Virus record (IMG/VR): IMGVR_UViG_3300031951_000001
Location: 186,001 to 250,000 of that record
DNA length: 64,000 nt
Strand: one strand, 5' to 3'
Shown: one piece after another, positions 3,367 through 62,054 of the stretch
Layout: each line of letters begins with the position of its first letter
How positions within the stretch are numbered: the first letter of the stretch is position 1
Notes under the pieces: generated by a model
Told to the model about the DNA's origin: nothing
Databases searched by the model: none
Seen by the model: the letters and a program-made list of their open reading frames with translations, nothing else
Made by a program: the position numbers and the translations under genes

Positions 3367-3374
3367 TATTTATA
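3367..3374 (+). promoter_or_regulatory. TATTTATA putative late promoter
   Basis: Exact motif 16 nt before ATG 3391; the same motif recurs before most structural genes. Confidence 0.6.
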
Positions 3375-3390
3375 ATCAAATAAGTTTTTG

Positions 3391-6300
3391 ATGGAGTTTG
3401 TAATCAGGAAAAATGCCACTTTACCACTGCTGAAAATGCAGATAGTTAAAGATGGTAGGGGTACGTATGAGGATTTTATGAATTTTATAGAGACCTCGAC
3501 TATCTATTTTTCGATGCAAAATTCTGAAACTGGTGTTATGAAAATTAACACCAAATTTGCAGGCTATGTTGAGAAGGAATTTATTGAGCCAAACTCTCCT
3601 CCCGAATATTACATTTATTATAAATTTACCAAAAGAGAAACAAACAAAGTTGGTAAATATGAAGGTCAATTCCTTTTAAAGAATGAAATAGGTACTTTAG
3701 TTCTTCCGATACGAGAAAAACTAAACATCACAATTAAAGATTCAAATTTAGAAGATGATTTAGACTATAATGAATGTTTTGTAGGACAATTCCAATGCTG
3801 TGTAATAGGACCTCCAGGTCCAAATACTCCATATGAATTTGAACTTAATGCTAACTATTCACCCGGCTCCGTTATTGCCGATTATACTCTAACCGCGAGT
3901 AAACCTGTCGATGCGACTACTACGGTATTATTTGAAAATATTTTAGTAACTTATACAGGTGAATCAATTACAATATCTACAGGAATTACAATAAATAGAG
4001 GTCAGACCACATCCTCGGTTGAAGTTGTAACTGATGGTGATTTTAGTAATTTAACACTGGCAAATTATTTTGATAATGTTTTAATTACACCTTCTACAAG
4101 TTTAACCCCAGATTCTATAGATATTAAACAATCATTTCCTCCATCAGTTCTTACAGGAGATTGTTATTGTTATAGATTTATTAATACTCAAGGTAAACCT
4201 GCAAAATTAAGATATACCCATTGTAATGGTACACCAGTCGAAACATCAATTTCACCAAATGGTAGTTACCAAGACTGTATTCAAACCAACCAATATAATG
4301 TATCAAGTGGAGTTATTGCCGGTGTGAGTCAGGAATGTTTCGGTCCTAATTATTTATGTTTTACGGCTGGTACTCCTTGTAAATGCTACAGGTACAACTA
4401 TATAGGTAATGGTGCTCAAATAGGTCAGATAAGGTATGTCGATTGTCAAAATAATACAATATCTGATAATTCAACTGATTCTGTTGTTGAGTTGTGTGTT
4501 TCTGAAAGACTTGGTGAAAAATATTATACTCATACTGAATTAGATGCGACTTGTACCACCGAAGCTGATTGTTCTTTTTGTTGTTCGGCGTCTCATAATT
4601 TAGTACTTACAACTGGAATATCCGGTGAAATAGACGAAAATGTTACAAAATTATATCGTTATAACACTCTAACCGGTAATCAAACTCTCATTTTAACAAT
4701 AGACCCTGTTTCATCACCCCCATATCAAGCTTTGGATGTTGCCCATAAATTTAGTCCTATCACTAATAATGGTAAAATTTGGATAAGTTTTAAAGGGTTA
4801 AATTCTGATAATTTACCGGACCAATATATTGAAGAGTATGACATTGATTCATCATATAACGTCCAATATAACCGTAGAATTAATATACCGTGGCTCAATG
4901 GATTACGAGAAATTGGTCACGGGTTGAGTCTTTACAATGAAAATAATTTAATTTTAACATTATGTCTTTTTGGGGTAAACGAAGAATTTGTACTTCTAAA
5001 TATAAATAATACAGGTGATATTCCTGATGCGAACTTGATACCTACCGGTATTTACTCACCATTCGAACCCACACAATTACCAAATACTCTTGATTCTGAA
5101 GGTAGAGTTAACAAAATTGTTGATATATTAATTACTTCTGACTCTAAAATAGTTGCGACTAATTACGGAATTTTGGCGAATGGGGCGGTCAATACAATAC
5201 TTCAAATTGATATAACGACTAACGATTATGAAACATTTTTTTATTGGCCAGATGTAAATAATTATGTTCAAAATTCATACCAAGGAATATTTGAAAGTTG
5301 TGGGACATTTTATTGTTTTACATATTCTGAAAATTTTAATGAGTTATGGAGTGTGGATACCGAAACTTATGAGTTAAATCAAGTTCAACCATATAATTCA
5401 AATTTACGAGTTGTGGTCGGGTGTTCATCATTATTGGTTTGCCAAACTCAAAGTTTTGTTCCTGACACTCCTTGTGCTCCTGATGCCGAGGGATGTAATA
5501 TCGCTATTACGGGTACTGTTCATAATGTATCATTTACTTATGAATACACTGGAGACGTGGTGGTGTATTCACCTCAAGATAATACAGAAGATAGTTTTAT
5601 TTGTTATGAAGATTGTATAAACGTTTATAACATCGAAGCTCTATTTTGTGGACACGGTGATGGCACCCCAACACCTGGAAATCCGTCAACCCACTTTACT
5701 GTAACATTTAATTTTGCTTCAGAAGTTAATGATGTTAGAATTGTAATATGGGGTTCAGGATGGGGAGGAAATGAAAATTTTCATATAATGACTGACCAAG
5801 GAGTCCCAACAATAACTTCATATTATAGTTGTTATAGTGAGATTATTGGTAACACAATTTATTCGGGGGCCGAACCATATCCACCTTATAAAGGTGGGGG
5901 TATTTTTAATGTAAATTCTAATAATGATTTTACATCGATTGTAATCAGTGGTGATGGCGGATGGGCTGGGTCATTTATTTATTTGTGTACAGATAGCTCT
6001 TTATGTTTTGATAATTGTACACCAATTCTATTGAGTCCTTTAGCACAAATAACTTTATATAATGGAACAAATCAATATTCAATAACTTTACCATACATAA
6101 ATGGAGGCCCATTTCCTAATCCAGGGACGAGTTATAATTACAACGCAATTGCTCATACCCCTAACAAATTGTGGATATCTAATTTCCTTTTCACAAGTGA
6201 CCCAACCAACTGGTATTTGTTAGAGTGGGATTTATCTCTGTGTCCATTTTCTGTAACGTACAATACAAGATATGTCCAAAGTGTTGATAGTGGAGTAACA

Positions 6301-9300
6301 TCCATAAGATTTGGAGAGAGTAGTAGTCCTGGACTTTTTGCCTTGAACGATACAACTTTATTGACCTCAATCAGAATTAACCAAAACAGTCCTCAGGAAA
6401 AAATAGTAATAGTTTCATTATCATCACCATTAATGACTGTTGTTGATTTATATTCATTACCAGGACAACAAGCGGTTTCGGGGGATATAATAGCAACTAA
6501 CAATTTTAATTTATTAGTTTCTACGGTAGATAATACGAACACATATAGATTATTACAATTAGATTTTATAACCGGTAATTTAGAAATAGAAGTACTATAT
6601 AATATAGGAGGAGCAAATATACGAGGTTTGTTCGAATACCAAGGTAACTTGTTCGCAACAACATCCAATGGATTATATCAGATAAACCCTAATTACCCCT
6701 ACCAATTTACCCAAGTTAACGCTACTACAACAAACCAAGATTCATCATCATCTATTTTATTTTGTAACCCAACTTATTTGTTACCACCACCAACACAAAC
6801 ACCGACTCCGACTCAAACACAAACGAATACCCCATCTAGATTACCTTTGGGTGAATTATGTAGATGTCATTATATAACTAACTATGAGAACAAACCTATC
6901 ACATTTACAGCAACAACTTGTGATTCTTCAATACCCCAAACTTATACGCTACCCGCTAATACAAGTTATCCTCCATCATGCTTCAAATTAGGTTCAGTAT
7001 ATAGTTTTAATGCTCAAGTAACAATCACATATTCTATAACACCTTGTGTATTTTGTAATGGTAAATATGTTTGTAACTCCGTATTGTGTCCTACACCTAC
7101 ACCAACTCCTACTAAAACTAGTACACCTACACCAACGTCACCATGTCAACCTCCCCAAGTTGGGGTTCAAACTTTTACCCAAGCTTGGTCAGTAAATAAC
7201 ACCTGTGTTGCCGCAGAGTTAGGTTATTATTTATTTACAACCGGTACAACTGAAGAGGCATGTCAGTCATTTGTTGGGTTCGCTGAAACTCCAGAAGGAA
7301 GTCAATATTGCCCTTCTTTAGGTACTAACACAATAACTCCATCAACCCAACAAAAAACTTTTGGTGTTTATCCTTATCCTGTAGAGATAGGAAGTAGACT
7401 TTATTCTACAGTCCCAACGTCATGTAACTGTCCATCTTTTTGGTTTAATGGGTGGGGCGGTCCTAATAATGACCCTGGCGCTCCTTTTTTGTTTCTTTCT
7501 AATGGCCCATATAAAGCTTGGTATAATGACGGGGTCATTGTAAACGGTGATAATACGTCTGTAAAAATAGCCACGATATCAGGATGTACCGTGATTGATA
7601 TAGAAATTTGTGAAGTGGTGGGATTCAATGTAAATATAATTGCGTCACCAGGTTCTGTCGATATGATATATAACTTTACGTCAACTCAACCTGTTAAATC
7701 CGCAGTTACTATTAATTTTACAAACATACTTCAAACATATACCGGAGACTCAATCTTTATCACCACAGGACTTACTTTAAATAGTGGTGAAACATCAACA
7801 TTTGTAACAGTTTCAAGAGATGTCGATTTTGATAATCTTACCTTAGGTTATTCTACTATAGATTTTTCAGTGACCTCTAATTTATACATTAATCCTGAAT
7901 TAATATATTTTAATTTCTCAATACCAACAATACCAACACCATCAAACAAATGTTACTGCTATGAATTAACAAACACGAGAACAGATGTAACCGCAATAGT
8001 CAAATATAGAACTTGCGAGAATGAAATAATTACAGATTATTTGAGCCCCCTTGAAACAATAAATGATTGTATAAGATTTAATTCAATTTCAGCTAGCTCA
8101 ATAGTCGATATTACTCAAATATCAGTTTGCGGTCCTCCTGATTATAGTTGCGTAACACCAAATGTACCATGTTATTGTTATAAATTAACTTATGATAATT
8201 CAGGTTATTTAGGTGCGATTCATTATATTGATTGTGCGGGTGAAAATCAAAGTATAACAAATACAACTCAATCATTATATGAAATTTGTGCCAGAGAAAT
8301 AACCGGAACTTTTAAATACAAGGCAGACCAATTAGGGGAATGTACCTCAACCACTCAATGTTCTCAATGTTGTACAACCAGTAAAGTTTTAGTTTTAACA
8401 AATGATTTCCCGAATGGTTCTCCTGGACCTACAGGGGTGGCCATCTATAACCCATCGAATGGTACATCAACTTTGATGAGTTTAACTTTAACAGGGTTAC
8501 CATATTCTCTTACTCACATTTACGATAACACCACAAACACAGGAAGAATGTGGATTGCTTTTGATGCCCCTGTACGTATAGAAGAATACACGCTTGACGC
8601 AAACTACAATCCTTCTTTTGATAGATATATTTTCATATCAGGAAATGAGTTTGAGATTGGAGAGTCGATAACTTATCTAAATTCAAATACTTTATTAAGT
8701 ACTAGACGGGGAACAAACCCAAGAAGAGTTGTTACAATAGATATATCTACACCAAATATTGACATCACCGTACCTCTAGTTAATACAATTTACACTATAC
8801 CATTAATTACTACTAATGCCGACGACATTACAAGTTTATTAGTGACCACTAATAATAGACTTATTGGTACTAGATATAGTGGAACATATACACAGAACGG
8901 TAGTTCAAATACAATTTTCCAAATTGACATGAACACAAATCAGCTCGAATATTTGGCGACATGGCCTGATGTTCCTTGGGAAGGCTGGTGGGACGGGATA
9001 TTCATAAACTGTAACAAATATTATAGGTTTGTTAATAATCAAGTTTCATTAAATCAATTATGGACATCCTCAACAAATTCTAATGGTATACCTACATATA
9101 GTTTAGTATTTAATAACAATAATTCATTATCAAACATATGGGACACATCTTCAAACCCTATTTGTAACACTTTTAATTTTAACCCTAACCAAATTTTATT
9201 AACACCCACACCTACTTTAACCCCAACAATAACTAAAACACCTACTAAAACACCTACCCCTACCGTAACCAAAACAAAAACTCCAACAGTTACTCCAACA

Positions 9301-12300
9301 TCAACTGATTATAAATCCGATTGTGCTTGTTATACTATAACTAACACTAGTCCATATAATTCTATTCCGATATTTTATTTTTATCGTAGATGTAAAACAA
9401 ACACACTAACGGTGGGTGTTGTTTATGGTAACACAACGTTTAGTGATTGTTATGTTCCTGGTTCGGTAACCGCATTCAACAACAATCCTAATTTAATTAT
9501 TACTTTGGGCGCGGAATGCAGTGATTGCAGCCAAGGATTTACATGTAATCCATGCCCATCTAAGACCCCAACTAAAACGCCTACCAACACTAAAACCCCA
9601 AGTAACACACCGACCAAGTCATTAACCCCAACCAAAACACCCACACCAACAATAACACCAACCGATTATCCTTATTCGGCGGACTGTAAGGTTTATTCTT
9701 TCAGTTTAATAACAGGTACTTTATATGGGTATGGGGTTGAGTCGGGGGACATAATCTATGAAATGGTATTACCAGTTCTAGGTGTTCCGACAAATATTGC
9801 AATATCTAATGTAAGTAATTTATTGTTTATATATTTTTCTCAAACTAATTTATTAATAACTTTTCAGTTTGATTATATTACAAATCAAATTATAGATGGG
9901 TCATTAACAACGTATGATATACCCGAACCAATTTTTAATCCAATAGAACAAAATCCTTATCAGAGTATAACTTCTATGGATAATGGACAAGGAGTATTTT
10001 TTACTTCACAAGGTTATAATCAAGAAAATTTAGAAACTTATTCTTTATTAACTTATGAATTAACCGGTACAATTACTTATTTATCCGATTTCCCCAATGG
10101 GTTATCTTCAAAAACAATAATTAGGGGTTCAAATAATTTAATTTTTGCATTGGTTGTAGAACAAAATTCATCCGATTGTGCAATACAACAATGGTATTGT
10201 GACGGGACCTTTGCTAACACGACTCTTCTTTATTCCTTTACATTACCATTATCGTATACGAATGGTACCTCTATATTCATTTATGATGGTGAATTTTATA
10301 TAGTTTCACAACAGTCATCACCTAATGGACCTCATATAGTATATACCGTTGACCCATACCAACCACACACATTGACTGAGGTTTCACAATTCACAATAGA
10401 ATTTGGGTATATAAATGATAGTGAATCTTTCGCTAATTGCAACCAGTTTGAATTTTACCAGTATCCTGACACTCCAACGTTAACTCCTACCCCAACATTA
10501 ACTAAAACTCCCACCCCAACAAGAACACAGACATCTACACAATTAACACCAACACCAACATCAACCAATTTGACTCAAACACCAACGGCAACAAATTTAA
10601 CCCCAACACCAACCCCTAATTGTTTTTGTACGAGCTTTAGAAATACTGTTAATTACGATGTAATTATTACTTTCAATACTTGTGATAAAAAAACAAAATC
10701 AAAATTATTAACACCTGATGGTACTCAAGGAAGTACATTTACAACTTGTGTCACGGATTACGTTGAGGATATTAGAATCAATGTAGTGTCGAATGGCCCA
10801 TGTGTTAGTGAGAGTTGCGGTAGCCCAACACCTACCCCCACAGTTACAAATACACAGACTCCGACAGTTACTTCATCTACAGGATTTATAAATGAGACTC
10901 CGACAGTAACCCCAACTAATACCGAAACCCCAACAATTACACCAACTAATACCGAAACCCCAACAATTACACCAACTAATAGTTCCACTCCTACAATGAC
11001 CTCAACTAATATTACCCCAACCCCAACTATAAGTTCAACACCATCACCAATAATCGAGACTTCAATTCTAATATCCGCAGAATATAAACCAGTCCCTAAT
11101 GGTGTTAATTATAATTTAGTTTTCAAATATAATTTTGTATCCAACACATTACAACCACTAATATCCCAGTCAGGTGAATCAATTCAAGGAATGTTATCAA
11201 CCGGTTTGGCTCACTCATATGATTTGAATACTAATACAGGATACGTTTGGACGAAGTCACCTAATTCATCACAAATAAATGAATATTCAATAATAAATTC
11301 AGATTATAATACATTATTTATAAGAACAATTACCTTGACTGGCTCATCATATGGTAAAGGTTTAACTTATATAAATGACACTACATTAATTAGTACGAGA
11401 AAAATAGGCGCTGAACAATGGGTTATTGAAATAAATATTGACCCGTCATTATCGAGCCCTATTGAGACTTTGAAATTTCAAGTACCGTTCAATCAGTCGG
11501 ATGATTATAGTGACTTAATGTTTACAAGTACAGGTAAATTTATATGGACAAACAATGGTCCATTAGGGTTCAATGTTGAGCAGTACATTTACGATACGGG
11601 GGAACTTAATTTTAGAGCACCTGCTTGTTGTACCCCAACCGCACTATGGCAATATAATGGGAATATTTATTCTTCTCAGTCGGGGGCAAATATGAGAATA
11701 AGATATGACTTAACAACCGCCGAAAAGACATTCATTTGTCCCCCAATCGGATGTGGAGAAACATCATGTGAAGACCCACTTAGTTGTATTTGTTCGGGAC
11801 CCTGTACGGTTGATTTTATATCTTTCGGAGGTTCTTCATTAGTGGAAGATAACAATGCCGAATTTGTGCCAAATATTGACCCAATTATTATTAATTTAAC
11901 AACCACTTTTGAGGAGGGTTCTATACAAATAACTTATAACATGGTTTCTAATAATCCTGTTATAGAAGCGATTAGAGTTAATTTTACAAATGTAATCGGT
12001 ACCCAGCTTGATTCTTGGTGGGCGGGAGAGCCAATAACTATTGATACTGGGGTTACAATATATTCAGGACAAACTTCAGGTTCTACTTTAGTCACACTTG
12101 AAGATAGTATTTATGATTTAGATAAAACAAGTTATTTTACTAATATCTCGATATACCCTCCTTATTTGAGTGGTATAACTACAATTGTGGAGACCAATGT
12201 TTTCCCAACCCCAACATCTACCGTAACATCAACAATAACCCCAACACCATCTATCACACCTAGTATAACCCCAACTAATACCCCCATATTCCCTCAAAAT

Positions 12301-14505
12301 ATTGAATTAATCTTGAGCACAAGTCTTGTTTATTATGTTGATTCATTCGAAATTATTTACAATTTGGTATCGAATTTACCACTAACTTATTATTTTGATT
12401 TGTTCTTTACAAATACCTTGGGTACAACAATTTATGGACCATTCCCAATTGAAACTGGAGTGTCAATAAACGTTGGTGAAGTTAGTGGAACAACATCAAT
12501 AATATTTGAAATACCCCCAAGTGTTTTAGATAGAACAAGTACCTTTAGTGGATTTACTTACGACCCATATTTTTATAGCGGAACGACCCAATTAAATGTT
12601 AATACGATGTTCCCAACCCCAACCCCAACAGTAACTATAACTCAAACCCCTCAATTTGACATAACTTCAACACCAACAAGAAGCGTAACCCCAACAAGAA
12701 CTCAAACTCCAACTCAATTGGCTTGTTCGGCAACCACTTCAATTATTAATACAAACACAGCAATAGTATTATCAAGAAAGAGTGATTTGGTATATAGTCA
12801 GCAAGGAACATTGTTCTATCCTATAACATTCACTTTAAGTGGTACTAGTCCAGTATACGATGCGACATCGACAACTGTACCGGTATGGGATACATCAAAT
12901 GTTAATAACGGTCCATTAAATAGAACTGGAGTTTGGACAAACTCAGGGCAACCTGTTGATATATGGATTGGAGATACATTCTGTTTTACAAGTGCAACAG
13001 ATAACAAGAGATATTACATAGGTATTGGGGCGGATAATGACTTTAGAATCCGACTCGACGGAGTACAGATTGTAAATTCTAGTATTGGTCCGTATAATAA
13101 TACAAATATACCATTCTTGTGGTGGCACGTTTATCCTATAACTGTTAATTCAGGAGCGCATACAGTTGAGGTCTATGGTTTAAATGACAACTCAATAGGT
13201 TCATTTGGATGTGAGATTTATGATAACACTCTATCCCAATTAACCGCAGCAACTTCAGTAAGTGACCTTAATATAATTTACAGTACAAGTGCATTAACAG
13301 CGGCTACTATAGTTCAGAGTATGGCGGGAGTTTATTTATCAAGCGGGTATACTTGTCCTTCAGGTTATGAATTAGACGTGTGTAAAAACTATTGTATTAG
13401 TTATGCTAATTGTCCATCACCAACTCCTACAAATACGCCATCTAATACACCAACAAAGAGTATAACACCAACTATAAGTTTAACACCGTCAATTACCCCT
13501 ACAATAAGTTTAACACCGTCAATTACCCCTACAATAAGTTTGACGCCATCACCAACCGCGTCACCATCACCACTCATTTGTCCATATCAAGTTGGAACTA
13601 AAGGATTTGGTTCTCCTATCTATAGGATAGGTTACAATGATTATACTAATTACATTTACGTGGTTACCACTGGTGGCACGGTTGTATTAGATAGTTCGTA
13701 CTTAACTATTGATACTTATCCAAATTCATTAAGTGGTGGAAGTGTAACTTATGCTAGTATGACATTTGCGCAAAGTACTTATAAGTATGTTTATGTTGGA
13801 CATGATGGGGATTTAAAGTATGTTGATTACTATGATATAACTAACCTTACTTCAGGTATAATATCCACCACTATAGAACCAACTGAGATAGATGTAGACA
13901 GAACCAATTCTTTTATAGGAATGATAGGGGTTAATGATGAATATAAACAAATAAACATTTCAACTCAATTAGTTAACTATACTGTTAATGTTAGTGCAAC
14001 CACTAATGGTGATATCGCTTGGTCCAGACTTAATGACACGTTTTGGATTGTTTCTACTGGAGACACGATTGTGTATATTGACCCAACGGCCAAAGATATA
14101 GTTGGTACAGATACTATTCCATCAGGAGGTTATAGTGGATATGGTAAACGATTACTTTATGACAATACTAATTCTTATACGTATTTACTTGTTGATAGTC
14201 AAAGATTATTTATATATGACGCCGTAGGTTCGGCAACATCTTATGTAGATTTAACTCCATACAGTGGAACTAATACAAGTATGACAATCGATATAAATAA
14301 TAACAAACTTTATATTCTAAATGTTGATGACAATGTGTTTGGATTAATTAAGATTGACATAACAACACTAACTGATGAAGGATTATCAGTACTTGGGACT
14401 TATAGTGGTAAGTCTAACGGAAGTATACTATATGAGCCAAATAATTCTGAAATTATATTGAGTCTTGAGCCATTTACTAATACGTTCTATATATTCTGTA
14501 CTTAA
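3391..14505 (+). CDS. Giant modular virion fibre/adhesin-like protein (~3700 aa)
   Basis: The N-terminal domain is paralogous to that of the next gene and resembles BppU N-terminal attachment domains. It contains repeated Ig-like, Cys-rich and beta-propeller modules, a PA14-like domain (~12760-13350), Pro/Thr linkers and no signal peptide. ATG at 3391 is preferred over TTG at 3388. Confidence 0.65.
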   Translation: MEFVIRKNATLPLLKMQIVKDGRGTYEDFMNFIETSTIYFSMQNSETGVMKINTKFAGYVEKEFIEPNSPPEYYIYYKFTKRETNKVGKYEGQFLLKNEIGTLVLPIREKLNITIKDSNLEDDLDYNECFVGQFQCCVIGPPGPNTPYEFELNANYSPGSVIADYTLTASKPVDATTTVLFENILVTYTGESITISTGITINRGQTTSSVEVVTDGDFSNLTLANYFDNVLITPSTSLTPDSIDIKQSFPPSVLTGDCYCYRFINTQGKPAKLRYTHCNGTPVETSISPNGSYQDCIQTNQYNVSSGVIAGVSQECFGPNYLCFTAGTPCKCYRYNYIGNGAQIGQIRYVDCQNNTISDNSTDSVVELCVSERLGEKYYTHTELDATCTTEADCSFCCSASHNLVLTTGISGEIDENVTKLYRYNTLTGNQTLILTIDPVSSPPYQALDVAHKFSPITNNGKIWISFKGLNSDNLPDQYIEEYDIDSSYNVQYNRRINIPWLNGLREIGHGLSLYNENNLILTLCLFGVNEEFVLLNINNTGDIPDANLIPTGIYSPFEPTQLPNTLDSEGRVNKIVDILITSDSKIVATNYGILANGAVNTILQIDITTNDYETFFYWPDVNNYVQNSYQGIFESCGTFYCFTYSENFNELWSVDTETYELNQVQPYNSNLRVVVGCSSLLVCQTQSFVPDTPCAPDAEGCNIAITGTVHNVSFTYEYTGDVVVYSPQDNTEDSFICYEDCINVYNIEALFCGHGDGTPTPGNPSTHFTVTFNFASEVNDVRIVIWGSGWGGNENFHIMTDQGVPTITSYYSCYSEIIGNTIYSGAEPYPPYKGGGIFNVNSNNDFTSIVISGDGGWAGSFIYLCTDSSLCFDNCTPILLSPLAQITLYNGTNQYSITLPYINGGPFPNPGTSYNYNAIAHTPNKLWISNFLFTSDPTNWYLLEWDLSLCPFSVTYNTRYVQSVDSGVTSIRFGESSSPGLFALNDTTLLTSIRINQNSPQEKIVIVSLSSPLMTVVDLYSLPGQQAVSGDIIATNNFNLLVSTVDNTNTYRLLQLDFITGNLEIEVLYNIGGANIRGLFEYQGNLFATTSNGLYQINPNYPYQFTQVNATTTNQDSSSSILFCNPTYLLPPPTQTPTPTQTQTNTPSRLPLGELCRCHYITNYENKPITFTATTCDSSIPQTYTLPANTSYPPSCFKLGSVYSFNAQVTITYSITPCVFCNGKYVCNSVLCPTPTPTPTKTSTPTPTSPCQPPQVGVQTFTQAWSVNNTCVAAELGYYLFTTGTTEEACQSFVGFAETPEGSQYCPSLGTNTITPSTQQKTFGVYPYPVEIGSRLYSTVPTSCNCPSFWFNGWGGPNNDPGAPFLFLSNGPYKAWYNDGVIVNGDNTSVKIATISGCTVIDIEICEVVGFNVNIIASPGSVDMIYNFTSTQPVKSAVTINFTNILQTYTGDSIFITTGLTLNSGETSTFVTVSRDVDFDNLTLGYSTIDFSVTSNLYINPELIYFNFSIPTIPTPSNKCYCYELTNTRTDVTAIVKYRTCENEIITDYLSPLETINDCIRFNSISASSIVDITQISVCGPPDYSCVTPNVPCYCYKLTYDNSGYLGAIHYIDCAGENQSITNTTQSLYEICAREITGTFKYKADQLGECTSTTQCSQCCTTSKVLVLTNDFPNGSPGPTGVAIYNPSNGTSTLMSLTLTGLPYSLTHIYDNTTNTGRMWIAFDAPVRIEEYTLDANYNPSFDRYIFISGNEFEIGESITYLNSNTLLSTRRGTNPRRVVTIDISTPNIDITVPLVNTIYTIPLITTNADDITSLLVTTNNRLIGTRYSGTYTQNGSSNTIFQIDMNTNQLEYLATWPDVPWEGWWDGIFINCNKYYRFVNNQVSLNQLWTSSTNSNGIPTYSLVFNNNNSLSNIWDTSSNPICNTFNFNPNQILLTPTPTLTPTITKTPTKTPTPTVTKTKTPTVTPTSTDYKSDCACYTITNTSPYNSIPIFYFYRRCKTNTLTVGVVYGNTTFSDCYVPGSVTAFNNNPNLIITLGAECSDCSQGFTCNPCPSKTPTKTPTNTKTPSNTPTKSLTPTKTPTPTITPTDYPYSADCKVYSFSLITGTLYGYGVESGDIIYEMVLPVLGVPTNIAISNVSNLLFIYFSQTNLLITFQFDYITNQIIDGSLTTYDIPEPIFNPIEQNPYQSITSMDNGQGVFFTSQGYNQENLETYSLLTYELTGTITYLSDFPNGLSSKTIIRGSNNLIFALVVEQNSSDCAIQQWYCDGTFANTTLLYSFTLPLSYTNGTSIFIYDGEFYIVSQQSSPNGPHIVYTVDPYQPHTLTEVSQFTIEFGYINDSESFANCNQFEFYQYPDTPTLTPTPTLTKTPTPTRTQTSTQLTPTPTSTNLTQTPTATNLTPTPTPNCFCTSFRNTVNYDVIITFNTCDKKTKSKLLTPDGTQGSTFTTCVTDYVEDIRINVVSNGPCVSESCGSPTPTPTVTNTQTPTVTSSTGFINETPTVTPTNTETPTITPTNTETPTITPTNSSTPTMTSTNITPTPTISSTPSPIIETSILISAEYKPVPNGVNYNLVFKYNFVSNTLQPLISQSGESIQGMLSTGLAHSYDLNTNTGYVWTKSPNSSQINEYSIINSDYNTLFIRTITLTGSSYGKGLTYINDTTLISTRKIGAEQWVIEINIDPSLSSPIETLKFQVPFNQSDDYSDLMFTSTGKFIWTNNGPLGFNVEQYIYDTGELNFRAPACCTPTALWQYNGNIYSSQSGANMRIRYDLTTAEKTFICPPIGCGETSCEDPLSCICSGPCTVDFISFGGSSLVEDNNAEFVPNIDPIIINLTTTFEEGSIQITYNMVSNNPVIEAIRVNFTNVIGTQLDSWWAGEPITIDTGVTIYSGQTSGSTLVTLEDSIYDLDKTSYFTNISIYPPYLSGITTIVETNVFPTPTSTVTSTITPTPSITPSITPTNTPIFPQNIELILSTSLVYYVDSFEIIYNLVSNLPLTYYFDLFFTNTLGTTIYGPFPIETGVSINVGEVSGTTSIIFEIPPSVLDRTSTFSGFTYDPYFYSGTTQLNVNTMFPTPTPTVTITQTPQFDITSTPTRSVTPTRTQTPTQLACSATTSIINTNTAIVLSRKSDLVYSQQGTLFYPITFTLSGTSPVYDATSTTVPVWDTSNVNNGPLNRTGVWTNSGQPVDIWIGDTFCFTSATDNKRYYIGIGADNDFRIRLDGVQIVNSSIGPYNNTNIPFLWWHVYPITVNSGAHTVEVYGLNDNSIGSFGCEIYDNTLSQLTAATSVSDLNIIYSTSALTAATIVQSMAGVYLSSGYTCPSGYELDVCKNYCISYANCPSPTPTNTPSNTPTKSITPTISLTPSITPTISLTPSITPTISLTPSPTASPSPLICPYQVGTKGFGSPIYRIGYNDYTNYIYVVTTGGTVVLDSSYLTIDTYPNSLSGGSVTYASMTFAQSTYKYVYVGHDGDLKYVDYYDITNLTSGIISTTIEPTEIDVDRTNSFIGMIGVNDEYKQINISTQLVNYTVNVSATTNGDIAWSRLNDTFWIVSTGDTIVYIDPTAKDIVGTDTIPSGGYSGYGKRLLYDNTNSYTYLLVDSQRLFIYDAVGSATSYVDLTPYSGTNTSMTIDINNNKLYILNVDDNVFGLIKIDITTLTDEGLSVLGTYSGKSNGSILYEPNNSEIILSLEPFTNTFYIFCT
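10912..10980 (+). repeat. Perfect 30-bp tandem repeat (2.3 copies) in a PT linker
   Basis: ccaactaataccgaaaccccaacaattaca repeated exactly. Confidence 0.9.
13474..13541 (+). repeat. Perfect 30-bp tandem repeat (about 2.3 copies) in a PT linker
   Basis: ataagtttaacaccgtcaattacccctaca repeated exactly. Confidence 0.9.
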
Positions 14506-14555: not shown

Positions 14556-14563
14556 TATTTATA
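14556..14563 (+). promoter_or_regulatory. TATTTATA putative late promoter
   Basis: Exact motif 15 nt before ATG 14579. Confidence 0.6.
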
Positions 14564-21732: not shown

Positions 21733-21761
21733 TTGACAACCTAACCTTCAATATTTATAAT
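21733..21761 (+). promoter_or_regulatory. Consensus sigma70-type promoter TTGACA-N17-TATAAT, overlapped by a TATTTATA motif
   Basis: TTGACA 21733-38, 17-nt spacer, TATAAT 21756-61; TATTTATA at 21752-59; directly upstream of the polymerase gene. Confidence 0.8.
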
Positions 21762-26054: not shown

Positions 26055-26076
26055 ATTGGTGTTTTATATATAAATA

Positions 26077-27618: not shown

Positions 27619-27651
27619 TTGAAGCTTATTTTTCTATAAATAAGCCGAAGG

Positions 27652-29427: not shown

Positions 29428-29456
29428 AAAATAATAAACAATTCGATATTTATCAA
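29428..29456. promoter_or_regulatory. Overlapping divergent promoters: TTGATA-N17-TATTTT (minus, helicase) and TATTTATC (plus, 29447-54, neck gene)
   Basis: Both motifs are read directly in a ~36-nt intergenic gap. Confidence 0.5.
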
Positions 29457-31352: not shown

Positions 31353-31402
31353 CAATTTATAAATAGTTATCGGTAAGTCAAGAATTTTGGTTTTTTCTTG
31401 AA

Positions 31403-31410
31403 TATTTATC
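31403..31410 (+). promoter_or_regulatory. TATTTATC putative late promoter (sheath)
   Basis: Motif variant 31 nt upstream of the sheath ATG. Confidence 0.55.
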
Positions 31411-35022: not shown

Positions 35023-35060
35023 AGGACAGGCCGATATAAAAGTCGGTCTGTCCTTATTTA
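35023..35060 (+). terminator. 13-bp stem-loop after the sheath gene
   Basis: aggacaggccgat-ataaaa-gtcggtctgtcct followed by tattta. Confidence 0.65.
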
Positions 35061-35065
35061 TTAAT

Positions 35066-35951: not shown

Positions 35952-35959
35952 TATTTATA
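35952..35959 (+). promoter_or_regulatory. TATTTATA putative late promoter (tail tube)
   Basis: Exact motif upstream of ATG 36003. Confidence 0.6.
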
Positions 35960-37628: not shown

Positions 37629-37636
37629 TATTTATA
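37629..37636 (+). promoter_or_regulatory. TATTTATA putative late promoter (tape measure)
   Basis: Exact motif 15 nt before ATG 37652. Confidence 0.6.
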
Positions 37637-39526: not shown

Positions 39527-39557
39527 CAAGTCATCTATTTATAATAAAGTTTAATTG

Positions 39558-44586: not shown

Positions 44587-44913
44587 ATGGCCGGCAGACA
44601 ATATTTTAATAGGTATAGTAATTTTGTAATTAACGGACAACAAACTGTTGTTCCTTATGTAAATCTGCCGAGTAAATCAACAGATAAAAGATTTATATAT
44701 AAGATAGGTCAATCAAGATTAGATAAGATGTCACAACAATATTATGGTACTCCATATTTCGGATGGTTGATATTAGCAGCAAACCCAATTTATGGAGGTC
44801 AAGAATGGAATATTGCTGACGGGTCTATATTGACTATTCCGTTTCCTTTAGTAGCTTCGTTACAAGACTATAAAAACGCTTTAGACAATCACTTCTTCTA
44901 CTATGGTAGGTAA
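44587..44913 (+). CDS. LysM-like baseplate wedge protein (gp53-like)
   Basis: RLDKMSQQYYGTPYFGWLILAANP...LTIP. Confidence 0.8.
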   Translation: MAGRQYFNRYSNFVINGQQTVVPYVNLPSKSTDKRFIYKIGQSRLDKMSQQYYGTPYFGWLILAANPIYGGQEWNIADGSILTIPFPLVASLQDYKNALDNHFFYYGR

Positions 44914-50900: not shown

Positions 50901-51901
50901 CCGCAGAAGCTCTCCAAGTCCTAAATCAGATGGCAAACCAAGGAGGGAATAGGGCAGTGGCAACTCAAAACCTATCCCTATATAATTTGTATAAAAACAG
51001 AAGTTATACGTGTACCGTAAGTTTATTAGGCAATGCCATGATACAACCAACAATGTATTTCAATCTTAGGCACGTACCAATGTTTAGTGGTCCATATATG
51101 ATTACAAAGGTTACTCATACTGTAAATCCCGGTAGTTTCGAGACCATATTGGAGGCGGTAAGACAACCGACCGCGTCTTTACCTAAAATAGATAACTTCT
51201 TACAGATATTAAAAACAAATCTTTTAAATTCTGTTATTGCTGAAAGTAATAGACAAAAGGAGGCGATAAACAATGAGGCTAAAAAGGCCGAAAATGTTAA
51301 AGCTCAACAGAAACAATTAAATGATTTTGTTAATACAAATCCTTCTAATACTGCATCGGCTAACCAAACCTGCTCAGCTTCAACTAATTTTGTAGAATTT
51401 ACTTATAAAGCTGCGGTTAAACAGACACTTACAACAAATCAAATGGTTGGGAAAGTAAAATCTTTGGTTGGGGCAACTACGATTTCAGAAAAAGATAAAT
51501 TAAATATGTGTGTGTTTGCAGCGGCTTATATTGCATCAGGAACACAAACAGGATTTCAGGCAAATAATAATAACTTTATCGGATTGGATTTACAACAGAA
51601 TTGGAATAAAAATTATATGGAGACTAGATTTTTCTGTTCTTCGAGTAACGTGCCATTTGCATCATTTGCGAATGCGGATGACTCCATCAAATACTTGGTT
51701 CAAAGATGGAAAGATAGAATGTATCAAGTTCAACAAATTGATGCAAAATTAATTACTAAATTTTACATTTTAAATTTTGCGGCTACCAATACTGGAACTG
51801 GAAGAGAGGATATATATAATTCTTACGACCCAGCACTATTAAGTAATATTGAAACAGAGGTGCAAAACGCAATTAACTTGTTTAATTCCTCAAATGGATA
51901 A
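44903..51901 (+). CDS. Large baseplate hub protein (gp27/VgrG-like halves with long insertions, C-terminal glucosaminidase-like domain)
   Basis: N-terminal ITVELIDVKG...FFLTLKGYYG; C-terminal YTCTVSLLGNAMIQPTMYFNL...GPYMITKVTH; follows the gp53-like gene. Confidence 0.65.
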   Translation: MVGNNENILTEFDYNNITIVDPNKVVDAQGKVKERFVNQEDLVYYVNLECKMLPRTKLALGVANNDSLQTISVASINFLKPGGKTFLDNSYTDEITGENSVKGEGVNQPKKTAISNPNKSDDFYIRQTITSGGKQGSTDNGLLGVRNITVKLDTSFLPIITVELIDVKGRALFEGGNNSPYAAFFNLPYPKFFLTLKGYYGKAIQLELMLQSFNSRFDAGTSNFEISLVFYTYKYTMLSEISMGMLLATPHMYKSSVQVAALTSGGGATTPVNQSFAEIGYEKIKEMYSEYKSKGLIPDDFPELTLIQLQYRLENFIKNILDNFTKVNMKPLDDLELYQKTINEYIRDVYTAQGEKAGSWFNKYMDTKAPFVLANQFKTKIYTFKGNLDAEKKQAAITELKSLISSYNEKLKTNNTLGDKGSYTIDNKTIPASIPVKITYDKTFLRTFTSENEINFEETFKLINGVPATGDTQINELKADFQKRNLFNASDTTVKDGQPEITYQYFAFDNNTNEIINNVSNFLDPTFFGEIDQIQKKLKAFRIQIEEDLTKALSNLLQNSNNGIGFVPNIRNVLAVVFASGEAFIRLMDDVHREAWNQRDAPARKNAIFNKQIESASQDALDPGLNNENPVYPWPQFLVETAGENGQEKYEIKYPGDSDVIQQTQGFQYDVWPEIEFEEEFIKGYIERTLPPQNPSTNFNELTEPKRISFNAMEFPINNIVFSNKEEIKFFFEIYERINFVTYYSKLSRCSNSIAESDKIIDLLADAEATNMVTSLGDTNPFLLDKLKNYAFNSQNYLSTLRGFSNDGTGQSWQNYLRGIYNTNYIRNLISNSEFEFMDLNTLLAPVSEPLVSLEKEQDIIDYLAQASLSNVFDVTDIYPFISNAWSKSGLANGKNVADAKQAFTTDKILTFNKTKKVITNFLDATSPEEKRIVTNFIYKTNNVPNITNENIKSFYEGRTPKKQLVTEGNITYSGYNGLLTSSQTTSMFNTPFFINSISEGVEKFRNFDKHPYKVPAYLFLNSLPLPTLREKYQTFESSTDGGVFSKPLDYIFATLKKFGAIHRVPYPWILKLGSIWHRYKEYTDKGIDILDGSWKNFDSTRSFDPFGSNPSRNYGLILNGSPFDIVLQKDTVFGTETSSLINTGFYPKLINDFNVFYQGYNIIDTSTEIKGTCTSAGNILTVLTVNHNSLTTGFILQGNGLNSAQILSQTDGIPGGPGTYQISTSQNVTNISFTVVNAFNTPYSDQSIQDSFLKGLSINYSQDSVIDLAEGFDDENPQRDLRIITWSVLVDDKNRTNQFIIPSQGSTFNQTKVECFENGKIKKEVNNNKSMFNGSVRMFWAAPHYGYFDLDNLLKPSPEEYLKTIFINQEEQNHFTLNSKPIYTKISEIFSVFEKEILDKFEEEFLNFSVCKYDFVDSGLIKPMAMTNSYAQASNPGTTGTTGDTAATQQTDLESSLTSTLKNFQTLFTNMMTVVKLTGTTGDQLITDVQNKQTSVIANTLTKFLTYDAAFKFGNPSNYNKKLFYSFTPSIIEDPFTWESYKEKTPNALPVDGGTTTLSDSKLNYPDAWKALETYVGKSDISSLTYSDNGSYITDFFIDLNVAFTDNNVKNLYPIIKIYASQKLAQFQVNSTPPTLPSTQPYEGALIETYELSGGSKVLIFKQGPRKFAVLVNQNEETLYIGEKISISANPDSQGIVNEALQAYYGNLAESPEVINIIKSPAPQFPAVPDPVGKWSKTTLSNSLGEFVRNTDDFQNKIIDSFFTKIRKKLPDISLKSEVINQSALEGPQSKVDLWETFKAINDKWIAGNDFKQKTLFEDILLLDRASRNIGDVVLCDIYKLRNQLMTIDPTNNMLGFITTILVENNFVVMNIPSYVNFYNVQEAQKNAKPRLDSTSDFANNLFGTFLNVDYRDSSAKMVCFYGGKPSEIVDIKDNVDFRFRDDAFEITKASSNPLAENQIGKTDWDKSNKVVGFSVDIGPQNQSIFYGFNINQGNSQSTAEALQVLNQMANQGGNRAVATQNLSLYNLYKNRSYTCTVSLLGNAMIQPTMYFNLRHVPMFSGPYMITKVTHTVNPGSFETILEAVRQPTASLPKIDNFLQILKTNLLNSVIAESNRQKEAINNEAKKAENVKAQQKQLNDFVNTNPSNTASANQTCSASTNFVEFTYKAAVKQTLTTNQMVGKVKSLVGATTISEKDKLNMCVFAAAYIASGTQTGFQANNNNFIGLDLQQNWNKNYMETRFFCSSSNVPFASFANADDSIKYLVQRWKDRMYQVQQIDAKLITKFYILNFAATNTGTGREDIYNSYDPALLSNIETEVQNAINLFNSSNG

Positions 51902-51939
51902 TTTTTCTATATTGAATAATATTTATAAATAAAAATACT

Positions 51940-52863: not shown

Positions 52864-52885
52864 AAAAGGGACTTCGGTCCCTTTT
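52864..52885. terminator. Bidirectional intrinsic terminator with cUUCGg tetraloop
   Basis: aaaagggac-ttcg-gtccctttt. Confidence 0.85.
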
Positions 52886-52889
52886 ACAT

Positions 52890-52918
52890 TTGACTACACT
52901 ACGGCTGACACTTATATT
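52890..52918 (+). promoter_or_regulatory. Sigma70-type promoter TTGACT-N17-TATATT for the replication operon
   Basis: -35 at 52890-95, 17-nt spacer, -10 at 52913-18; immediately after the terminator. Confidence 0.75.
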
Positions 52919-56553: not shown

Positions 56554-56582
56554 TATTTATCTAACACAACAATATATTTCTC

Positions 56583-61373: not shown

Positions 61374-61399
61374 AAAATCCCGAGAAATCGGGATTTTTT
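61374..61399 (+). terminator. Intrinsic terminator (GAAA tetraloop) after nrdA
   Basis: aaaatcccga-gaaa-tcgggatttttt. Confidence 0.85.
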
Positions 61400-61418
61400 A
61401 TTTTAGATATTTATAGTT

Positions 61419-62042
61419 ATGGCAGTTTATAATGAGAACATAGAGTTGTTTAAATGTTTAGTGAGGGTTTCTCACTTTACTAAAAATCCTGAAGATGATA
61501 ATAAGTTTCATAAAGCCTATGCTTTCGCGATACAATCAATTGCCGGTAAAATTTTAACATTTCACGTAATGACCGATTATGGTATGATGAGGTCACGAGT
61601 ACCAATCTCTGAAATATTCTTAAAAGAACCCACCAATGACATACCTTTTCATTTTAAACAATTATGGGATTGTTTTTCAGAGAATGTAACGGTAACCACG
61701 TATGAATATTTATATGAAAAACGCTGTGAAGTTGTTTTAAGGGATGGGTCAAAAATTTGGGCAACTTATTTAATGACGGTTGATTGGTATAGAAATCCAT
61801 ATTCGGACGAACCTTCGGATTATAAGTGTGGGCACATACTTATTGCCGATGACGGTTACTTATTATGCCAACCAAATAATAGAATTTATTGGAGAGACTC
61901 AAATTGGGTAACAAATAAGTTTCCGATAGAACCAAAAAAAATAAAAGTTGATACCGAATTACCTTCTGTTGAAACTTTATCAGATAGGTGGGTTGCGGAA
62001 GATGGTGATAGTTACTACTATAATATAAAACAAACGGACTAG
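61419..62042 (+). CDS. Conserved phage hypothetical protein (LWDCFS / QPNNRI motifs)
   Basis: 207-aa ORF with TATTTATA 3 nt upstream (61408-15). Confidence 0.7.
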   Translation: MAVYNENIELFKCLVRVSHFTKNPEDDNKFHKAYAFAIQSIAGKILTFHVMTDYGMMRSRVPISEIFLKEPTNDIPFHFKQLWDCFSENVTVTTYEYLYEKRCEVVLRDGSKIWATYLMTVDWYRNPYSDEPSDYKCGHILIADDGYLLCQPNNRIYWRDSNWVTNKFPIEPKKIKVDTELPSVETLSDRWVAEDGDSYYYNIKQTD

Positions 62043-62054
62043 TATTTATATTAA

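What the first reader, a model, noticed from the sequence alone, without database searches (positions are those of the whole stretch)
3367..62050. Genome-wide TATTTAT(A/C/T) motif: the reverse complement of the T4 late promoter, used in sense orientation
On the sense strand it occurs before genes at 3367, 14556, 21752, 29447, 31403, 35055, 35952, 37629, 39536, 51920, 56554, 61408 and 62043, and on the minus strand at 26069, 27635 and 31358. T4 gp55 recognises TATAAATA, whereas here the strand-specific motif is TATTTATA. In four cases it ends only 3-4 nt before the ATG (29458, 35066, 61419, 62055), implying leaderless transcripts or a role in translation initiation.
Basis: partly seen in the sequence, partly recalled or inferred. 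Interest (0 to 1): 0.6.

Follow-up and report, generated by a model that had tools for sequence, protein, structure and literature searches.

The report
Phage-specific promoter motif in jumbo phage
TATTTAT(A/T/C) is the main promoter signal of a 322-kb freshwater jumbo phage of Bacteroidota; one of the phage's two own sigma factors probably reads it, and it often sits so close to the ATG that the mRNA would have no leader.

Summary
All 16 coordinates hold the motif, and 15 lie 3-54 nt upstream of a gene and point at it. About 1 such site is expected in the window's 1,348 intergenic bases.

In the whole 322-kb phage genome, 95-96 copies lie in sense upstream DNA against about 11 expected. TATTTAT is the commonest 7-mer there. 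Orthologous upstream regions of two relatives (70-75% nucleotide identity) keep it in 26-31 of 32-37 cases while the flanks diverge. It is also the top non-homopolymer word in 68 loci from distant members of the same jumbo-phage family.

It behaves as a stand-alone -10-like promoter element with no -33/-35 partner. A second, rarer motif, TAnnTTTG with an upstream TTTG, is the host-type Bacteroidota sigma-A promoter. That motif precedes the phage's RpoD-like sigma gene. The phage also encodes a divergent gp55-like sigma and shows no RNA polymerase.

Most likely reading: host promoters drive early genes, and a phage sigma then redirects host polymerase to TATTTAT promoters. I favour the gp55-like sigma for this role.

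Spacing to the ATG is bimodal at 3-5 nt and 12-17 nt, which fits leaderless or roughly 10-nt-leader mRNAs. No transcription start data exist. In the same orientation, TATTTATA differs from T4's TATAAATA only at its two central bases.

The parts
3367..3374 (+). P-type promoter core TATTTATA, 13 nt before TTG 3388 (16 nt before ATG 3391) of the 3,705-aa ORF
   Evidence: The motif is kept upstream of the best-matching genes in G002 and G004 while the flanks diverge, but those pairings are ambiguous between the two paralogous giant ORFs.
14556..14563 (+). P-type core TATTTATA, 15 nt before ATG 14579 (1,413-aa ORF)
21752..21759 (+). P-type core TATTTATA, 54 nt before ATG 21814 (family-B DNA polymerase)
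   Evidence: Kept in G002; in G004 the 70 nt examined hold no TATTTAT.
26069..26076 (-). P-type core TATTTATA, 14 nt before the ATG of the minus-strand gene 24933-26054
   Evidence: Kept in G002 and G004.
27635..27642 (-). P-type core TATTTATA, 16 nt before the ATG of the minus-strand gene 26077-27618 (513 aa, Fe/Mn superoxide dismutase domains)
   Evidence: Kept in G002.
29447..29454 (+). P-type core TATTTATC, 3 nt before ATG 29458 (leaderless class)
   Evidence: G004 keeps the motif but 16 nt from its ATG; G002 lacks it.
31403..31410 (+). P-type core TATTTATC, 31 nt before ATG 31442 (tail sheath)
   Evidence: Kept in G004.
35055..35062 (+). P-type core TATTTATT, 3 nt before ATG 35066, directly behind a hairpin (leaderless class)
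35952..35959 (+). P-type core TATTTATA, 43 nt before ATG 36003 (tail tube)
   Evidence: Kept in G002 and G004.
37629..37636 (+). P-type core TATTTATA, 15 nt before ATG 37652 (624-aa ORF)
39536..39543 (+). P-type core TATTTATA, 11 nt before TTG 39555 (14 nt before ATG 39558) of the 1,676-aa ORF
   Evidence: Kept in G004.
51920..51927 (+). P-type core TATTTATA, 12 nt before ATG 51940. The palindrome TATTTATAAATA also yields the antisense copy at 51924.
   Evidence: Kept in G002 and G004.
56554..56561 (+). P-type core TATTTATC, 21 nt before ATG 56583 (DnaB-like helicase)
   Evidence: Kept with the same eighth base in G002 and G004.
61374..61405 (+). Terminator-like hairpin (9-bp stem AAAATCCCG/CGGGATTTT) plus T-rich tail, ending 2 nt before the next P core
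   Evidence: A transcript of gene 61419 that does not read through this hairpin must start within about 13 nt of the ATG.
61408..61415 (+). P-type core TATTTATA, 3 nt before ATG 61419 (leaderless class)
62043..62050 (+). P-type core TATTTATA, 4 nt before ATG 62055 (baseplate wedge protein; leaderless class)
   Evidence: G004 has TATTTATT 4 nt before its ATG.
31358..31365 (-).
52885..52892 (+). Host-type (Bacteroidota sigma-A) -7 box TACATTTG, directly behind a terminator-like hairpin and 52 nt before ATG 52945 (SSB). It is the only such box in the window's intergenic DNA that points at a gene (the other, 31434-31441 minus, does not).
   Evidence: class defined.

Best explanation
TATTTAT(A/T/C), preferably preceded by A, is the core of the phage's own promoter class. 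The phage is a roughly 322-kb contractile-tailed jumbo phage of freshwater Bacteroidota.

Shown: the motif is a strand-specific, gene-proximal element that is conserved across the phage family. It has no -33/-35 partner and is followed 3-5 nt later by A-rich positions.

Inferred: the phage has no RNA polymerase of its own. Host RNA polymerase with host sigma-A first uses a small set of host-type promoters (TTTG, about 19 nt, TAnnTTTG). One of these drives the phage's RpoD-like sigma gene. A phage sigma factor then redirects the host core enzyme to about 100 TATTTAT promoters that drive replication, structural and many small genes.

I favour the second, highly divergent gp55-like sigma (G000:136629-137381, minus strand, outside the window) as the reader of the motif. 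My odds are about 0.5 for this sigma, about 0.3 for the RpoD-like sigma, and the rest for host sigma-A alone or other options. Transcription would start 4-6 nt after the 8-mer. About a quarter of these promoters (ATG 3-5 nt after the 8-mer) would then give leaderless mRNAs, and most others would give leaders of about 10 nt.
For: Enrichment and orientation: 95-96 sense copies in upstream intergenic DNA against about 11 expected, and the commonest 7-mer there.

Conservation: the same holds in two relatives at 70-75% nucleotide identity. The motif is kept in 31/37 and 26/32 orthologous upstream regions, against 5/73 and 4/69 for genes that lack it. It is the top non-homopolymer 7-mer (253 sense, 86 antisense) in 68 loci of distant family members. 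It lies before the conserved 124-aa gene next to the gp55-like sigma in 37 of 40 clades.

Architecture: an A before the core, no G at the eighth base, A-rich positions 4-6 nt after the 8-mer, and no -33 element. The 90 host-type sites do show TT(G/T)(G/T) at -35 to -32.

Spacing to the start codon: never 0-2 nt, peaks at 3-5 nt (all but one of 70 starts ATG) and at 12-17 nt, in all three genomes. The host-type box peaks at exactly 4 nt. That places +1 on the A of ATG if the box spans -12 to -5 as in Flavobacterium psychrophilum (PMC9723704).

Terminators: 13 of 96 sites sit about 15 nt behind a hairpin with a T run, against 10 of 230 control gene starts.

No other promoter word: after masking both motifs, only terminator words stay enriched.

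Transcription machinery: no RNA polymerase beta, beta-prime or T7-type domain, and no DxDGD motif in any ORF of 900 aa or more. There is an RpoD-like sigma. A TAnnTTTG box lies in the stretch upstream of its operon in 52 of 53 distinct relatives' loci.

Second sigma: the model of residues 30-131 matches sigma region 2 (Z 8.9, rmsd 2.8 A over 91 residues), and 49 of the 50 best rows are sigma factors. Of 56 family members, 15 hit the T4 gp55 family phrog_234. Orthologues pass Pfam's Sigma70_r2 cut-off. A profile comparison with T4 gp55 gives E 1.9e-4, with gp55 Y97 aligned to a near-invariant Y.

Likeness to T4: late promoters are also a lone 8-mer. TATTTATA keeps the adenines gp55 flips at -12 and -8 (PMC7892883).
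Against: No transcription start site has been mapped. The only metatranscriptome with exact matches (run X18) gives contigs inside the sheath and tube genes and no 5' ends, and it could contain DNA.

Which sigma reads the motif is not settled. Both sigmas occur together in the more complete genomes of the family, so co-occurrence cannot separate them. The gp55-like assignment rests on weak sequence scores (E 0.005-0.05 for this protein itself, hhalign probability 48%) and on a model with a mean pLDDT of 69. No gp33-like coactivator was found; the neighbouring 124-aa protein folds as a generic helical hairpin. No promoter was found directly upstream of the gp55-like sigma gene: it abuts the gene before it with no intergenic gap in nearly all relatives, and none of the 76 distinct loci shows a promoter box before its start. 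Its timing is therefore unknown.

The motif drives replication genes too, unlike T4 late promoters. The commonest spacing of 3 nt is 1 nt shorter than for the host-type box and 2 nt shorter than T4 geometry.
Confidence: 0.7

Rival explanations
1. The motif is a promoter, but it is read by the phage's RpoD-like sigma (G000:301298-302098). The gp55-like protein would do something else or read an undetected late class.
For: The RpoD-like sigma is a complete sigma with regions 1.2, 2 and 4. It sits behind a conserved host-type promoter and so would be made early. It carries Bacteroidota sigma-A signatures (NLRFVITVAKQYQNQGL, FISYAVWW), differs from sigma-A at several region 2.4 positions, and lacks about 20 residues of region 3. 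The motif shares T-12, A-11, T-8 and T-6 with the Bacteroidota -7 box, and its spacing to the ATG is almost the same. The motif precedes replication genes, which would suit a middle-gene sigma.
Against: Its region 4.2 recognition helix is the same as in Bacteroidota sigma-A, so a -33 TTTG would be expected, and the motif has none. After masking both motifs no third promoter word is left for the gp55-like sigma to read.
Confidence: 0.3
2. The motif is a variant -7 box read by host sigma-A without any phage factor, so all promoters in this phage are host promoters.
For: It matches four of the six specified positions of TAnnTTTG and has the same position relative to start codons.
Against: The two classes are sharply separate: A against T at the sixth position, never G at the eighth position in the one class and always G in the other, and a -33 element in only one class. 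TATTTATG is rare, 3 sense copies. The phage family conserves two sigma genes. According to PMC9723704, sigma-A motifs in Flavobacterium vary around TAnnTTTG.
Confidence: 0.08
3. The motif is not a promoter. It would be an RNA-level or translation signal in the 5' leader, or the binding site of a phage regulator.
For: It lies close to start codons in an organism group that lacks Shine-Dalgarno sequences (PMC6847099 abstract). A-rich sequence follows it.
Against: The distance to the ATG ranges from 3 to more than 50 nt and falls into two classes. At 3-5 nt there is no room for a leader element. Some sites follow terminator hairpins directly, including 61374-61405 and then 61408. No other promoter word exists for about 100 transcription units.
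Confidence: 0.05

Closest known systems
[quoted passage not shown]
   Same: Both are a lone 8-bp -10-like element with no -35 element, read through host core RNA polymerase. Six of eight bases are identical in the same orientation, including the adenines that gp55 flips into its deep pockets at -12 and -8 (PMC7892883). The phage encodes a divergent sigma with a region-2 fold and weak similarity to the gp55 family.
   Different: The central bases are TT rather than AA. The motif is not restricted to late genes. The candidate sigma is 249 aa with an extra C-terminal helical domain, against 185 aa for gp55. No gp33 homologue was found. Clamp dependence is unknown. The host phylum is Bacteroidota.
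Bacteroidota sigma-A promoters (-7 box TAnnTTTG, -33 TTTG)
   Same: Both start with TA and have T at the fifth and seventh positions. Their placement relative to start codons is nearly identical. The phage itself also uses true host-type promoters, for example before its RpoD-like sigma gene.
   Different: The sixth base is A rather than T, the eighth is A/T/C and never G, positions 3-4 are fixed as TT, and there is no -33 element.
Phage sigma cascades such as Bacillus phage SPO1 gp28 and gp33/34 (from general knowledge)
   Same: Host-type early promoters drive a phage sigma gene, and phage sigmas then redirect the host core enzyme to phage-specific promoters.
   Different: Only one phage-specific promoter class is detectable here although there are two phage sigmas. 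The promoter sequences are unrelated.
Moraphages and other metagenomic jumbo phages of Bacteroidota (PMC12619734)
   Same: Freshwater origin, genome sizes of 200-307 kb, predicted Flavobacteriia hosts, and a sigma factor among the core genes.
   Different: Whether this 322-kb phage belongs to that lineage was not tested. From term searches of the text (not a full read), that paper appears to report no promoter analysis.
Leaderless mRNAs
   Same: The promoter box lies 3-5 nt before an ATG, so the transcript would begin at or next to the A of AUG.
   Different: About 25% of this phage's promoters have this layout. By comparison, 5.5% of mRNAs are leaderless in F. psychrophilum (PMC9723704) and 3.7% have leaders under 10 nt in B. 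thetaiotaomicron (PMC7366714). No 5' ends have been measured here.

Membership tests
T4-type late promoter system (gp55/gp33/gp45) | 8-bp element TATAAATA in sense orientation at the -10 position | tested here: not met
   TATAAATA occurs 17 times in sense and 50-51 times in antisense in upstream DNA. The sense element is TATTTAT[ATC]. Six of eight bases are shared.
T4-type late promoter system (gp55/gp33/gp45) | No conserved -35 element | tested here: met
   The 263 sites from three genomes show no -33/-35 signal, only a weak AT-only tract 14-17 nt upstream of the core.
T4-type late promoter system (gp55/gp33/gp45) | A gp55-family sigma encoded by the phage | tested here: inconclusive
   phrog_234 gives E 0.005-0.05 for this protein, and 15 of 56 family members hit it with a best E of 7.5e-6. 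hhalign against gp55 gives probability 48% and E 1.9e-4. The fold matches sigma region 2 with Z 8.9. A direct search with T4 gp55 found nothing.
T4-type late promoter system (gp55/gp33/gp45) | A gp33-type coactivator and dependence on a sliding clamp | tested here: inconclusive
   The neighbouring 124-aa acidic protein models as a generic helical hairpin with no gp33 match. Clamp dependence cannot be tested by computation.
T4-type late promoter system (gp55/gp33/gp45) | Use restricted to late (virion and lysis) genes | tested here: not met
   The motif precedes the DNA polymerase (21752) and DnaB (56554) genes as well as the sheath, tube and baseplate genes.
Bacteroidota sigma-A promoter | -7 box TAnnTTTG | tested here: not met
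   The sixth base is A and the eighth is never G. A separate class of true TAnnTTTG sites does exist in the phage: TATATTTG occurs 13 times against 1.6 expected.
Bacteroidota sigma-A promoter | -33 TTTG element | tested here: not met
   Absent from TATTTAT sites and present at TAnnTTTG sites, where G rises to 0.31-0.32 at -33/-32.
Sigma-70 family (the candidate second sigma, P0121) | Region 2 domain | tested here: met
   Model residues 30-131 match sigma-E region 2 with Z 8.9 and rmsd 2.8 A over 91 of 91 residues. Four orthologues score 25.5-29.6 bits against Pfam Sigma70_r2, whose cut-off is 24. This protein itself has no Pfam hit.
Leaderless mRNA | Transcript 5' end at the A of the start codon | not testable with these tools
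   Only the geometry is available: spacing of 3-5 nt in 27/99, 22/91 and 21/89 promoters, never 0-2 nt. The laid runs were contigs without 5' ends.

The most novel reading that the evidence does not exclude
A very large, uncultured family of roughly 300-kb jumbo phages of Bacteroidota may run almost its whole non-early programme from one promoter class, TATTTAT(A/T). That class would be read by a new branch of gp55-like sigma factors carrying an extra C-terminal domain. This would be a T4-late-like mechanism that shifted at the two central promoter bases and spread to replication genes. It would be combined with a second, sigma-A-derived phage sigma and with leaderless mRNAs at about a quarter of promoters, a share far above that of the hosts.
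Probability: 0.4. Interest if true: 0.65.

Novelty: new variant of a known kind. Interest (0 to 1): 0.55.

Why it matters
The motif provides a simple, testable promoter rule for a very abundant but uncultured group of freshwater and marine jumbo phages. The two sigma families have thousands of relatives in metagenomes. The rule allows operon maps to be drawn from sequence alone. It also offers a natural pair of orthogonal promoter and sigma parts for Bacteroidota, where genetic tools are scarce. The work links T4-type late transcription to a distant phage lineage. It also points to unusually heavy use of leaderless mRNAs in a phylum that lacks Shine-Dalgarno sequences, and this can be checked directly by 5'-end sequencing.

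Tried and rejected
- **Nucleotide and protein matches to known phages.** Megablast of 10 kb against known phages found nothing. A translated search (tblastn) with the DNA polymerase found only distant Salinibacter and cyanophage relatives at about 25% identity.
- **Phage RNA polymerase.** There were no Pfam hits to the beta, beta-prime or T7-type domains. The T7-type search rang in no control genome, so that blank is weak. No ORF of 900 aa or more has a DxDGD motif. The giant ORFs of 3,705, 2,332 and 1,676 aa have no Pfam family.
- **A weak region-4 hit at G000:90538.** This turned out to be an HNH-like protein, not a sigma.
- **A third promoter word.** None was found after masking both motifs; only terminator words remained. 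The shared word AGTTTGATAAATT occurs just twice.
- **Subclasses of the motif.** Splitting by spacing, gene size or genome half gave no clear classes. The only differences were a higher share of A before the core in the small-gene half (46/62 against 15/34) and a mild preference for A as the eighth base in the other half.
- **Transcript evidence.** Three runs were laid on 6,000 bases. Only contigs were available and they showed no 5' ends.
- **Co-occurrence test to separate the two sigmas.** This failed because both occur in the more complete genomes and most contigs are 16-53% fragments.
- **The promoter of the gp55-like sigma gene.** None lies directly upstream of the gene.
- **The neighbouring 124-aa protein as a gp33 analogue.** Its model is a generic helical hairpin with no meaningful match.
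- **Profile searches against solved structures.** A profile of close homologues of the second sigma matched nothing. A diverse profile matched sigma factors only weakly.
- **Literature.** Searches for the motif as a phage promoter found nothing relevant.
- **Genetic code.** Only table 11 was used.
Full report
**What the window is.** The window is G000:C1:186001-250000 of a single 322,372-bp contig with 34% G+C. IMG/VR and CheckV rate the contig as a complete virus record. It encodes a tail sheath, tail tube, baseplate hub and wedge proteins, a family-B DNA polymerase, helicases, SSB, a UvsX-like recombinase and ribonucleotide reductase. It also holds several giant ORFs with no family match. 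It is therefore a contractile-tailed jumbo phage. Near-identical DNA occurs in many lake and freshwater metagenomes. No phage in the reference collection is close at the nucleotide level.

**The observation.**
- The window as a whole is not enriched: 42 copies against 32 +/- 5.6 in shuffles.
- Placement is what stands out. Only 1,348 nt of the window are intergenic.
- Even so, 15 copies point at a gene that starts 3-54 nt downstream. About 0.95 are expected from a Markov model of the phage's own AT-rich intergenic DNA (p about 1e-13).
- The site at 31358(-) precedes no gene. The antisense copies at 36697 and 51924 do not either.
- Genome-wide, 114 of 216 copies lie in the 7.4% of DNA that is non-coding.
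- Sense copies in upstream intergenic DNA number 95-96 against about 11 +/- 3.5 expected. TATTTAT is the commonest 7-mer there, ahead of the A and T runs.

**Anatomy of the motif.**
- Alignment of 98 sites in this genome and 263 sites in three genomes gives this pattern: A (about 65%), then TATTTAT, then A/T/C and never G. Two to three positions that avoid C follow, and then A-rich positions 4-6 nt after the 8-mer.
- There is also a weak AT-only tract 14-17 nt upstream of the core. Nothing appears at -33/-35.
- The distance from the 8-mer to the start codon falls into two classes in all three genomes. It is never 0-2 nt. It is 3-5 nt in 27/99, 22/91 and 21/89 cases, and all but one of these 70 start at ATG. 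It is rarely 6-11 nt. A second peak lies at 12-17 nt.
- Thirteen of 96 sites lie about 15 nt behind a hairpin with a T run, against 10 of 230 control gene starts.
- In the window, the hairpin at 61374-61405 is followed by the motif at 61408 and the ATG at 61419.

**Conservation.**
- The phage belongs to a very large uncultured family. A search with its RpoD-like sigma returned 357 relatives in IMG/VR.
- Two complete relatives at 70-75% nucleotide identity show the same enrichment.
- Orthologous upstream regions keep the motif in 31/37 and 26/32 cases while the flanks diverge. Genes that lack it have it in their orthologues in only 5/73 and 4/69 cases.
- I also looked at 68 loci from distant members, with second-sigma identity of 31-40% and G+C of 24-35%. 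Of the 30 largest contigs tested, 29 are rated as 16-75% fragments, consistent with genomes of about 300 kb. There TATTTAT is again the top non-homopolymer word in sense upstream DNA, 253 against 86.
- The motif lies before the conserved 124-aa gene next to the second sigma in 37 of 40 clades.
- One clade (locus L137) appears to use cTATTTA[AC] instead.

**A second promoter class and the host.**
- Upstream regions that lack the motif often carry TAnnTTTG. TATATTTG occurs 13 times against 1.6 expected.
- These sites have TT(G/T)(G/T) at -35 to -32.
- This is the published promoter of the Bacteroidota primary sigma factor: a -7 box at -12 to -5 and a -33 TTTG (PMC7366714, PMC9723704).
- No Shine-Dalgarno-like sequence stood out on inspection of the upstream regions (not quantified), and the phage sigma carries Bacteroidota signatures. 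Together with the promoter type, these points indicate a Bacteroidota host.
- One short contig with a 74%-identical sigma was binned with a Flavobacterium genome, which is a weak hint.
- The host-type box also often lies exactly 4 nt before an ATG. With the box at -12 to -5, +1 then falls on the A of the ATG.
- In the window this class is represented by TACATTTG at 52885, behind a terminator and before the SSB gene.

**Who reads the motif.**
- No RNA polymerase domain was found, and no giant ORF has the catalytic DxDGD motif. The phage most likely uses the host core enzyme.
- It encodes two sigma-like proteins, both outside the window.

*Sigma 1 (G000:301298-302098, 266 aa).*
- It is RpoD-like, with regions 1.2, 2 and 4.
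- It is 41% identical to a Prolixibacteraceae sigma-A and shares the Bacteroidota signatures NLRFVITVAKQYQNQGL and FISYAVWW.
- It has the same region 4.2 recognition helix as sigma-A and lacks about 20 residues of region 3.
- Its two-gene operon is preceded by TTTG-N19-TATCTTTG. A TAnnTTTG box lies in that position in 52 of 53 distinct relatives' loci. It is therefore very probably an early, host-transcribed gene.

*Sigma 2 (G000:136629-137381, minus strand, 249 aa).*
- It has no Pfam hit itself.
- Its model matches sigma region 2 (sigma-E, Z 8.9, rmsd 2.8 A over 91 residues). Forty-nine of the 50 best rows are sigma factors.
- Fifteen of 56 diverse family members hit the T4 gp55 family.
- Four orthologues pass Pfam's Sigma70_r2 cut-off.
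- A profile comparison with T4 gp55 gives E 1.9e-4 at 48% probability. In it, gp55 Y97, which stacks on the flipped A at -12, aligns with a near-invariant tyrosine. H95, part of the -9 pocket, aligns with a tyrosine (PMC7892883).
- The family has 1,155 clusters at 50% identity.

**Choice between the two sigmas.**
- The motif is a lone 8-9-mer without a -33 element, like T4 late promoters (PMC7892883).
- In the same orientation it differs from TATAAATA only at the two central bases. If aligned as in T4 (-13 to -6), it keeps the two adenines that gp55 buries in deep pockets at -12 and -8.
- Sigma 1 has an intact sigma-A-type region 4, so it should prefer promoters with a -33 element.
- Several points weigh against the favoured choice. 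The motif also drives replication genes. No gp33-like partner was found. Sigma 2's own promoter and timing are unknown, because the gene abuts the gene before it with no intergenic gap in nearly all relatives. The two sigmas occur together, so co-occurrence cannot separate them.

**Leaderless mRNAs.**
- The sharp 3-5 nt class, the absence of 0-2 nt spacings, the almost exclusive use of ATG and the parallel 4-nt peak of the host-type box all fit transcripts that begin at or next to the A of the AUG.
- About a quarter of this phage's promoters have this layout.
- By comparison, 5.5% of mRNAs are leaderless in F. psychrophilum (PMC9723704) and 3.7% have leaders under 10 nt in B. thetaiotaomicron (PMC7366714).
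- This is inference from geometry. No 5' ends were available. The metatranscriptome run X18 has exact contigs inside the sheath and tube genes only.

**Comparison with known systems, and novelty.**
- The system works like a phage sigma switch, and the T4 late promoter is its nearest relative in sequence and architecture.
- It fails the membership tests for the T4 late system: the consensus differs, it is not restricted to late genes, and no gp33 was found.
- It also fails the tests for the Bacteroidota sigma-A promoter: the sixth and eighth bases differ and there is no -33 element.
- A recent paper describes related freshwater jumbo phages of Bacteroidota with a core sigma factor. From term searches of its text, it appears to contain no promoter analysis (PMC12619734). 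Literature searches for this motif as a phage promoter found nothing.
- I rate the finding as a new variant of a known kind.

Noticed in passing
window 26077-27618 (-): This 513-aa ORF has both Fe/Mn superoxide dismutase domains in its N-terminal half (Pfam E 1.9e-40 and 8.7e-22) and about 290 further residues with no match. It appears to be a phage-encoded SOD fusion with its own TATTTATA promoter.
   Followed up: partly
window 3388-14505, 14579-18820, 18853-21729, 39555-44585, 44903-51901: These giant ORFs (3,705, 1,413, 958, 1,676 and 2,332 aa) have no Pfam family. The second and third share the unknown-function family phrog_15511. The N-terminal regions of the first two look paralogous, because both picked the same best match in relatives.
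   Followed up: partly
G000:C1:300781-302098 (outside the window): A host-type promoter, TTTG-N19-TATCTTTG, lies before a two-gene operon made of a DUF6576-containing 165-171-aa protein and the RpoD-like sigma. A TAnnTTTG box lies in that upstream stretch in 52 of 53 distinct relatives' loci.
   Followed up: yes
G000:C1:136246-137381 (-) (outside the window): The divergent gp55-like sigma (249 aa) is followed by a conserved acidic 124-aa protein. That protein has its own TATTTAT promoter in 37 of 40 clades. It models as a helical hairpin with a disordered acidic tail, and its role is unknown.
   Followed up: partly
G000:C1:145147-145160 and 151564-151575 (-): Two intergenic sites share AGTTTGATAAATT about 26-28 nt before ATGs inside the long minus-strand gene block. 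The first fits TAnnTTTG (TAAGTTTG). They may be weak host-like promoters for the block that holds the gp55-like sigma.
   Followed up: partly
locus L137 (IMGVR_UViG_3300033571_019687): A distant clade, whose second sigma is 33% identical, seems to use cTATTTA[AC] rather than aTATTTAT[AT] upstream of its genes. This is a possible handle for covariation between sigma and promoter.
   Followed up: partly
G000 genome halves (below 130 kb against 130 kb and above): An A just before the core is more frequent in the small-gene half (46/62) than in the half with large structural and replication genes (15/34). An A as the eighth base shows the opposite trend (28/62 against 22/34). This may hint at two sub-classes.
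   Followed up: no
G000:C1 about 32,000-39,200 (outside the window): This region holds arrays of small paralogous genes whose sequences begin ATGAAATA(C/T)CT(T/A)ATCAC(C/A)GAATC. Each sits behind a terminator and its own TATTTAT(C/T) box 3-5 nt before the ATG, a repeated leaderless cassette.
   Followed up: no
window 32233-32448, 33142-33355, 34093-34243, 36275-36467: A freshwater metatranscriptome run (X18) holds contigs identical to parts of the sheath and tube genes. This is compatible with expression in nature, but DNA carry-over cannot be excluded.
   Followed up: partly
window 969-3341 (+): This 790-aa ORF combines weak methyltransferase matches at its N-terminus with a weak glucosyltransferase-like match. 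It may be a DNA-modification enzyme.
   Followed up: no
G000:C1 about 18,600, 90,400 and 99,100: tRNA-like strings (GGTTCGAATCC) appear in upstream regions, so the phage probably carries tRNA genes. No tRNA scan was run.
   Followed up: no
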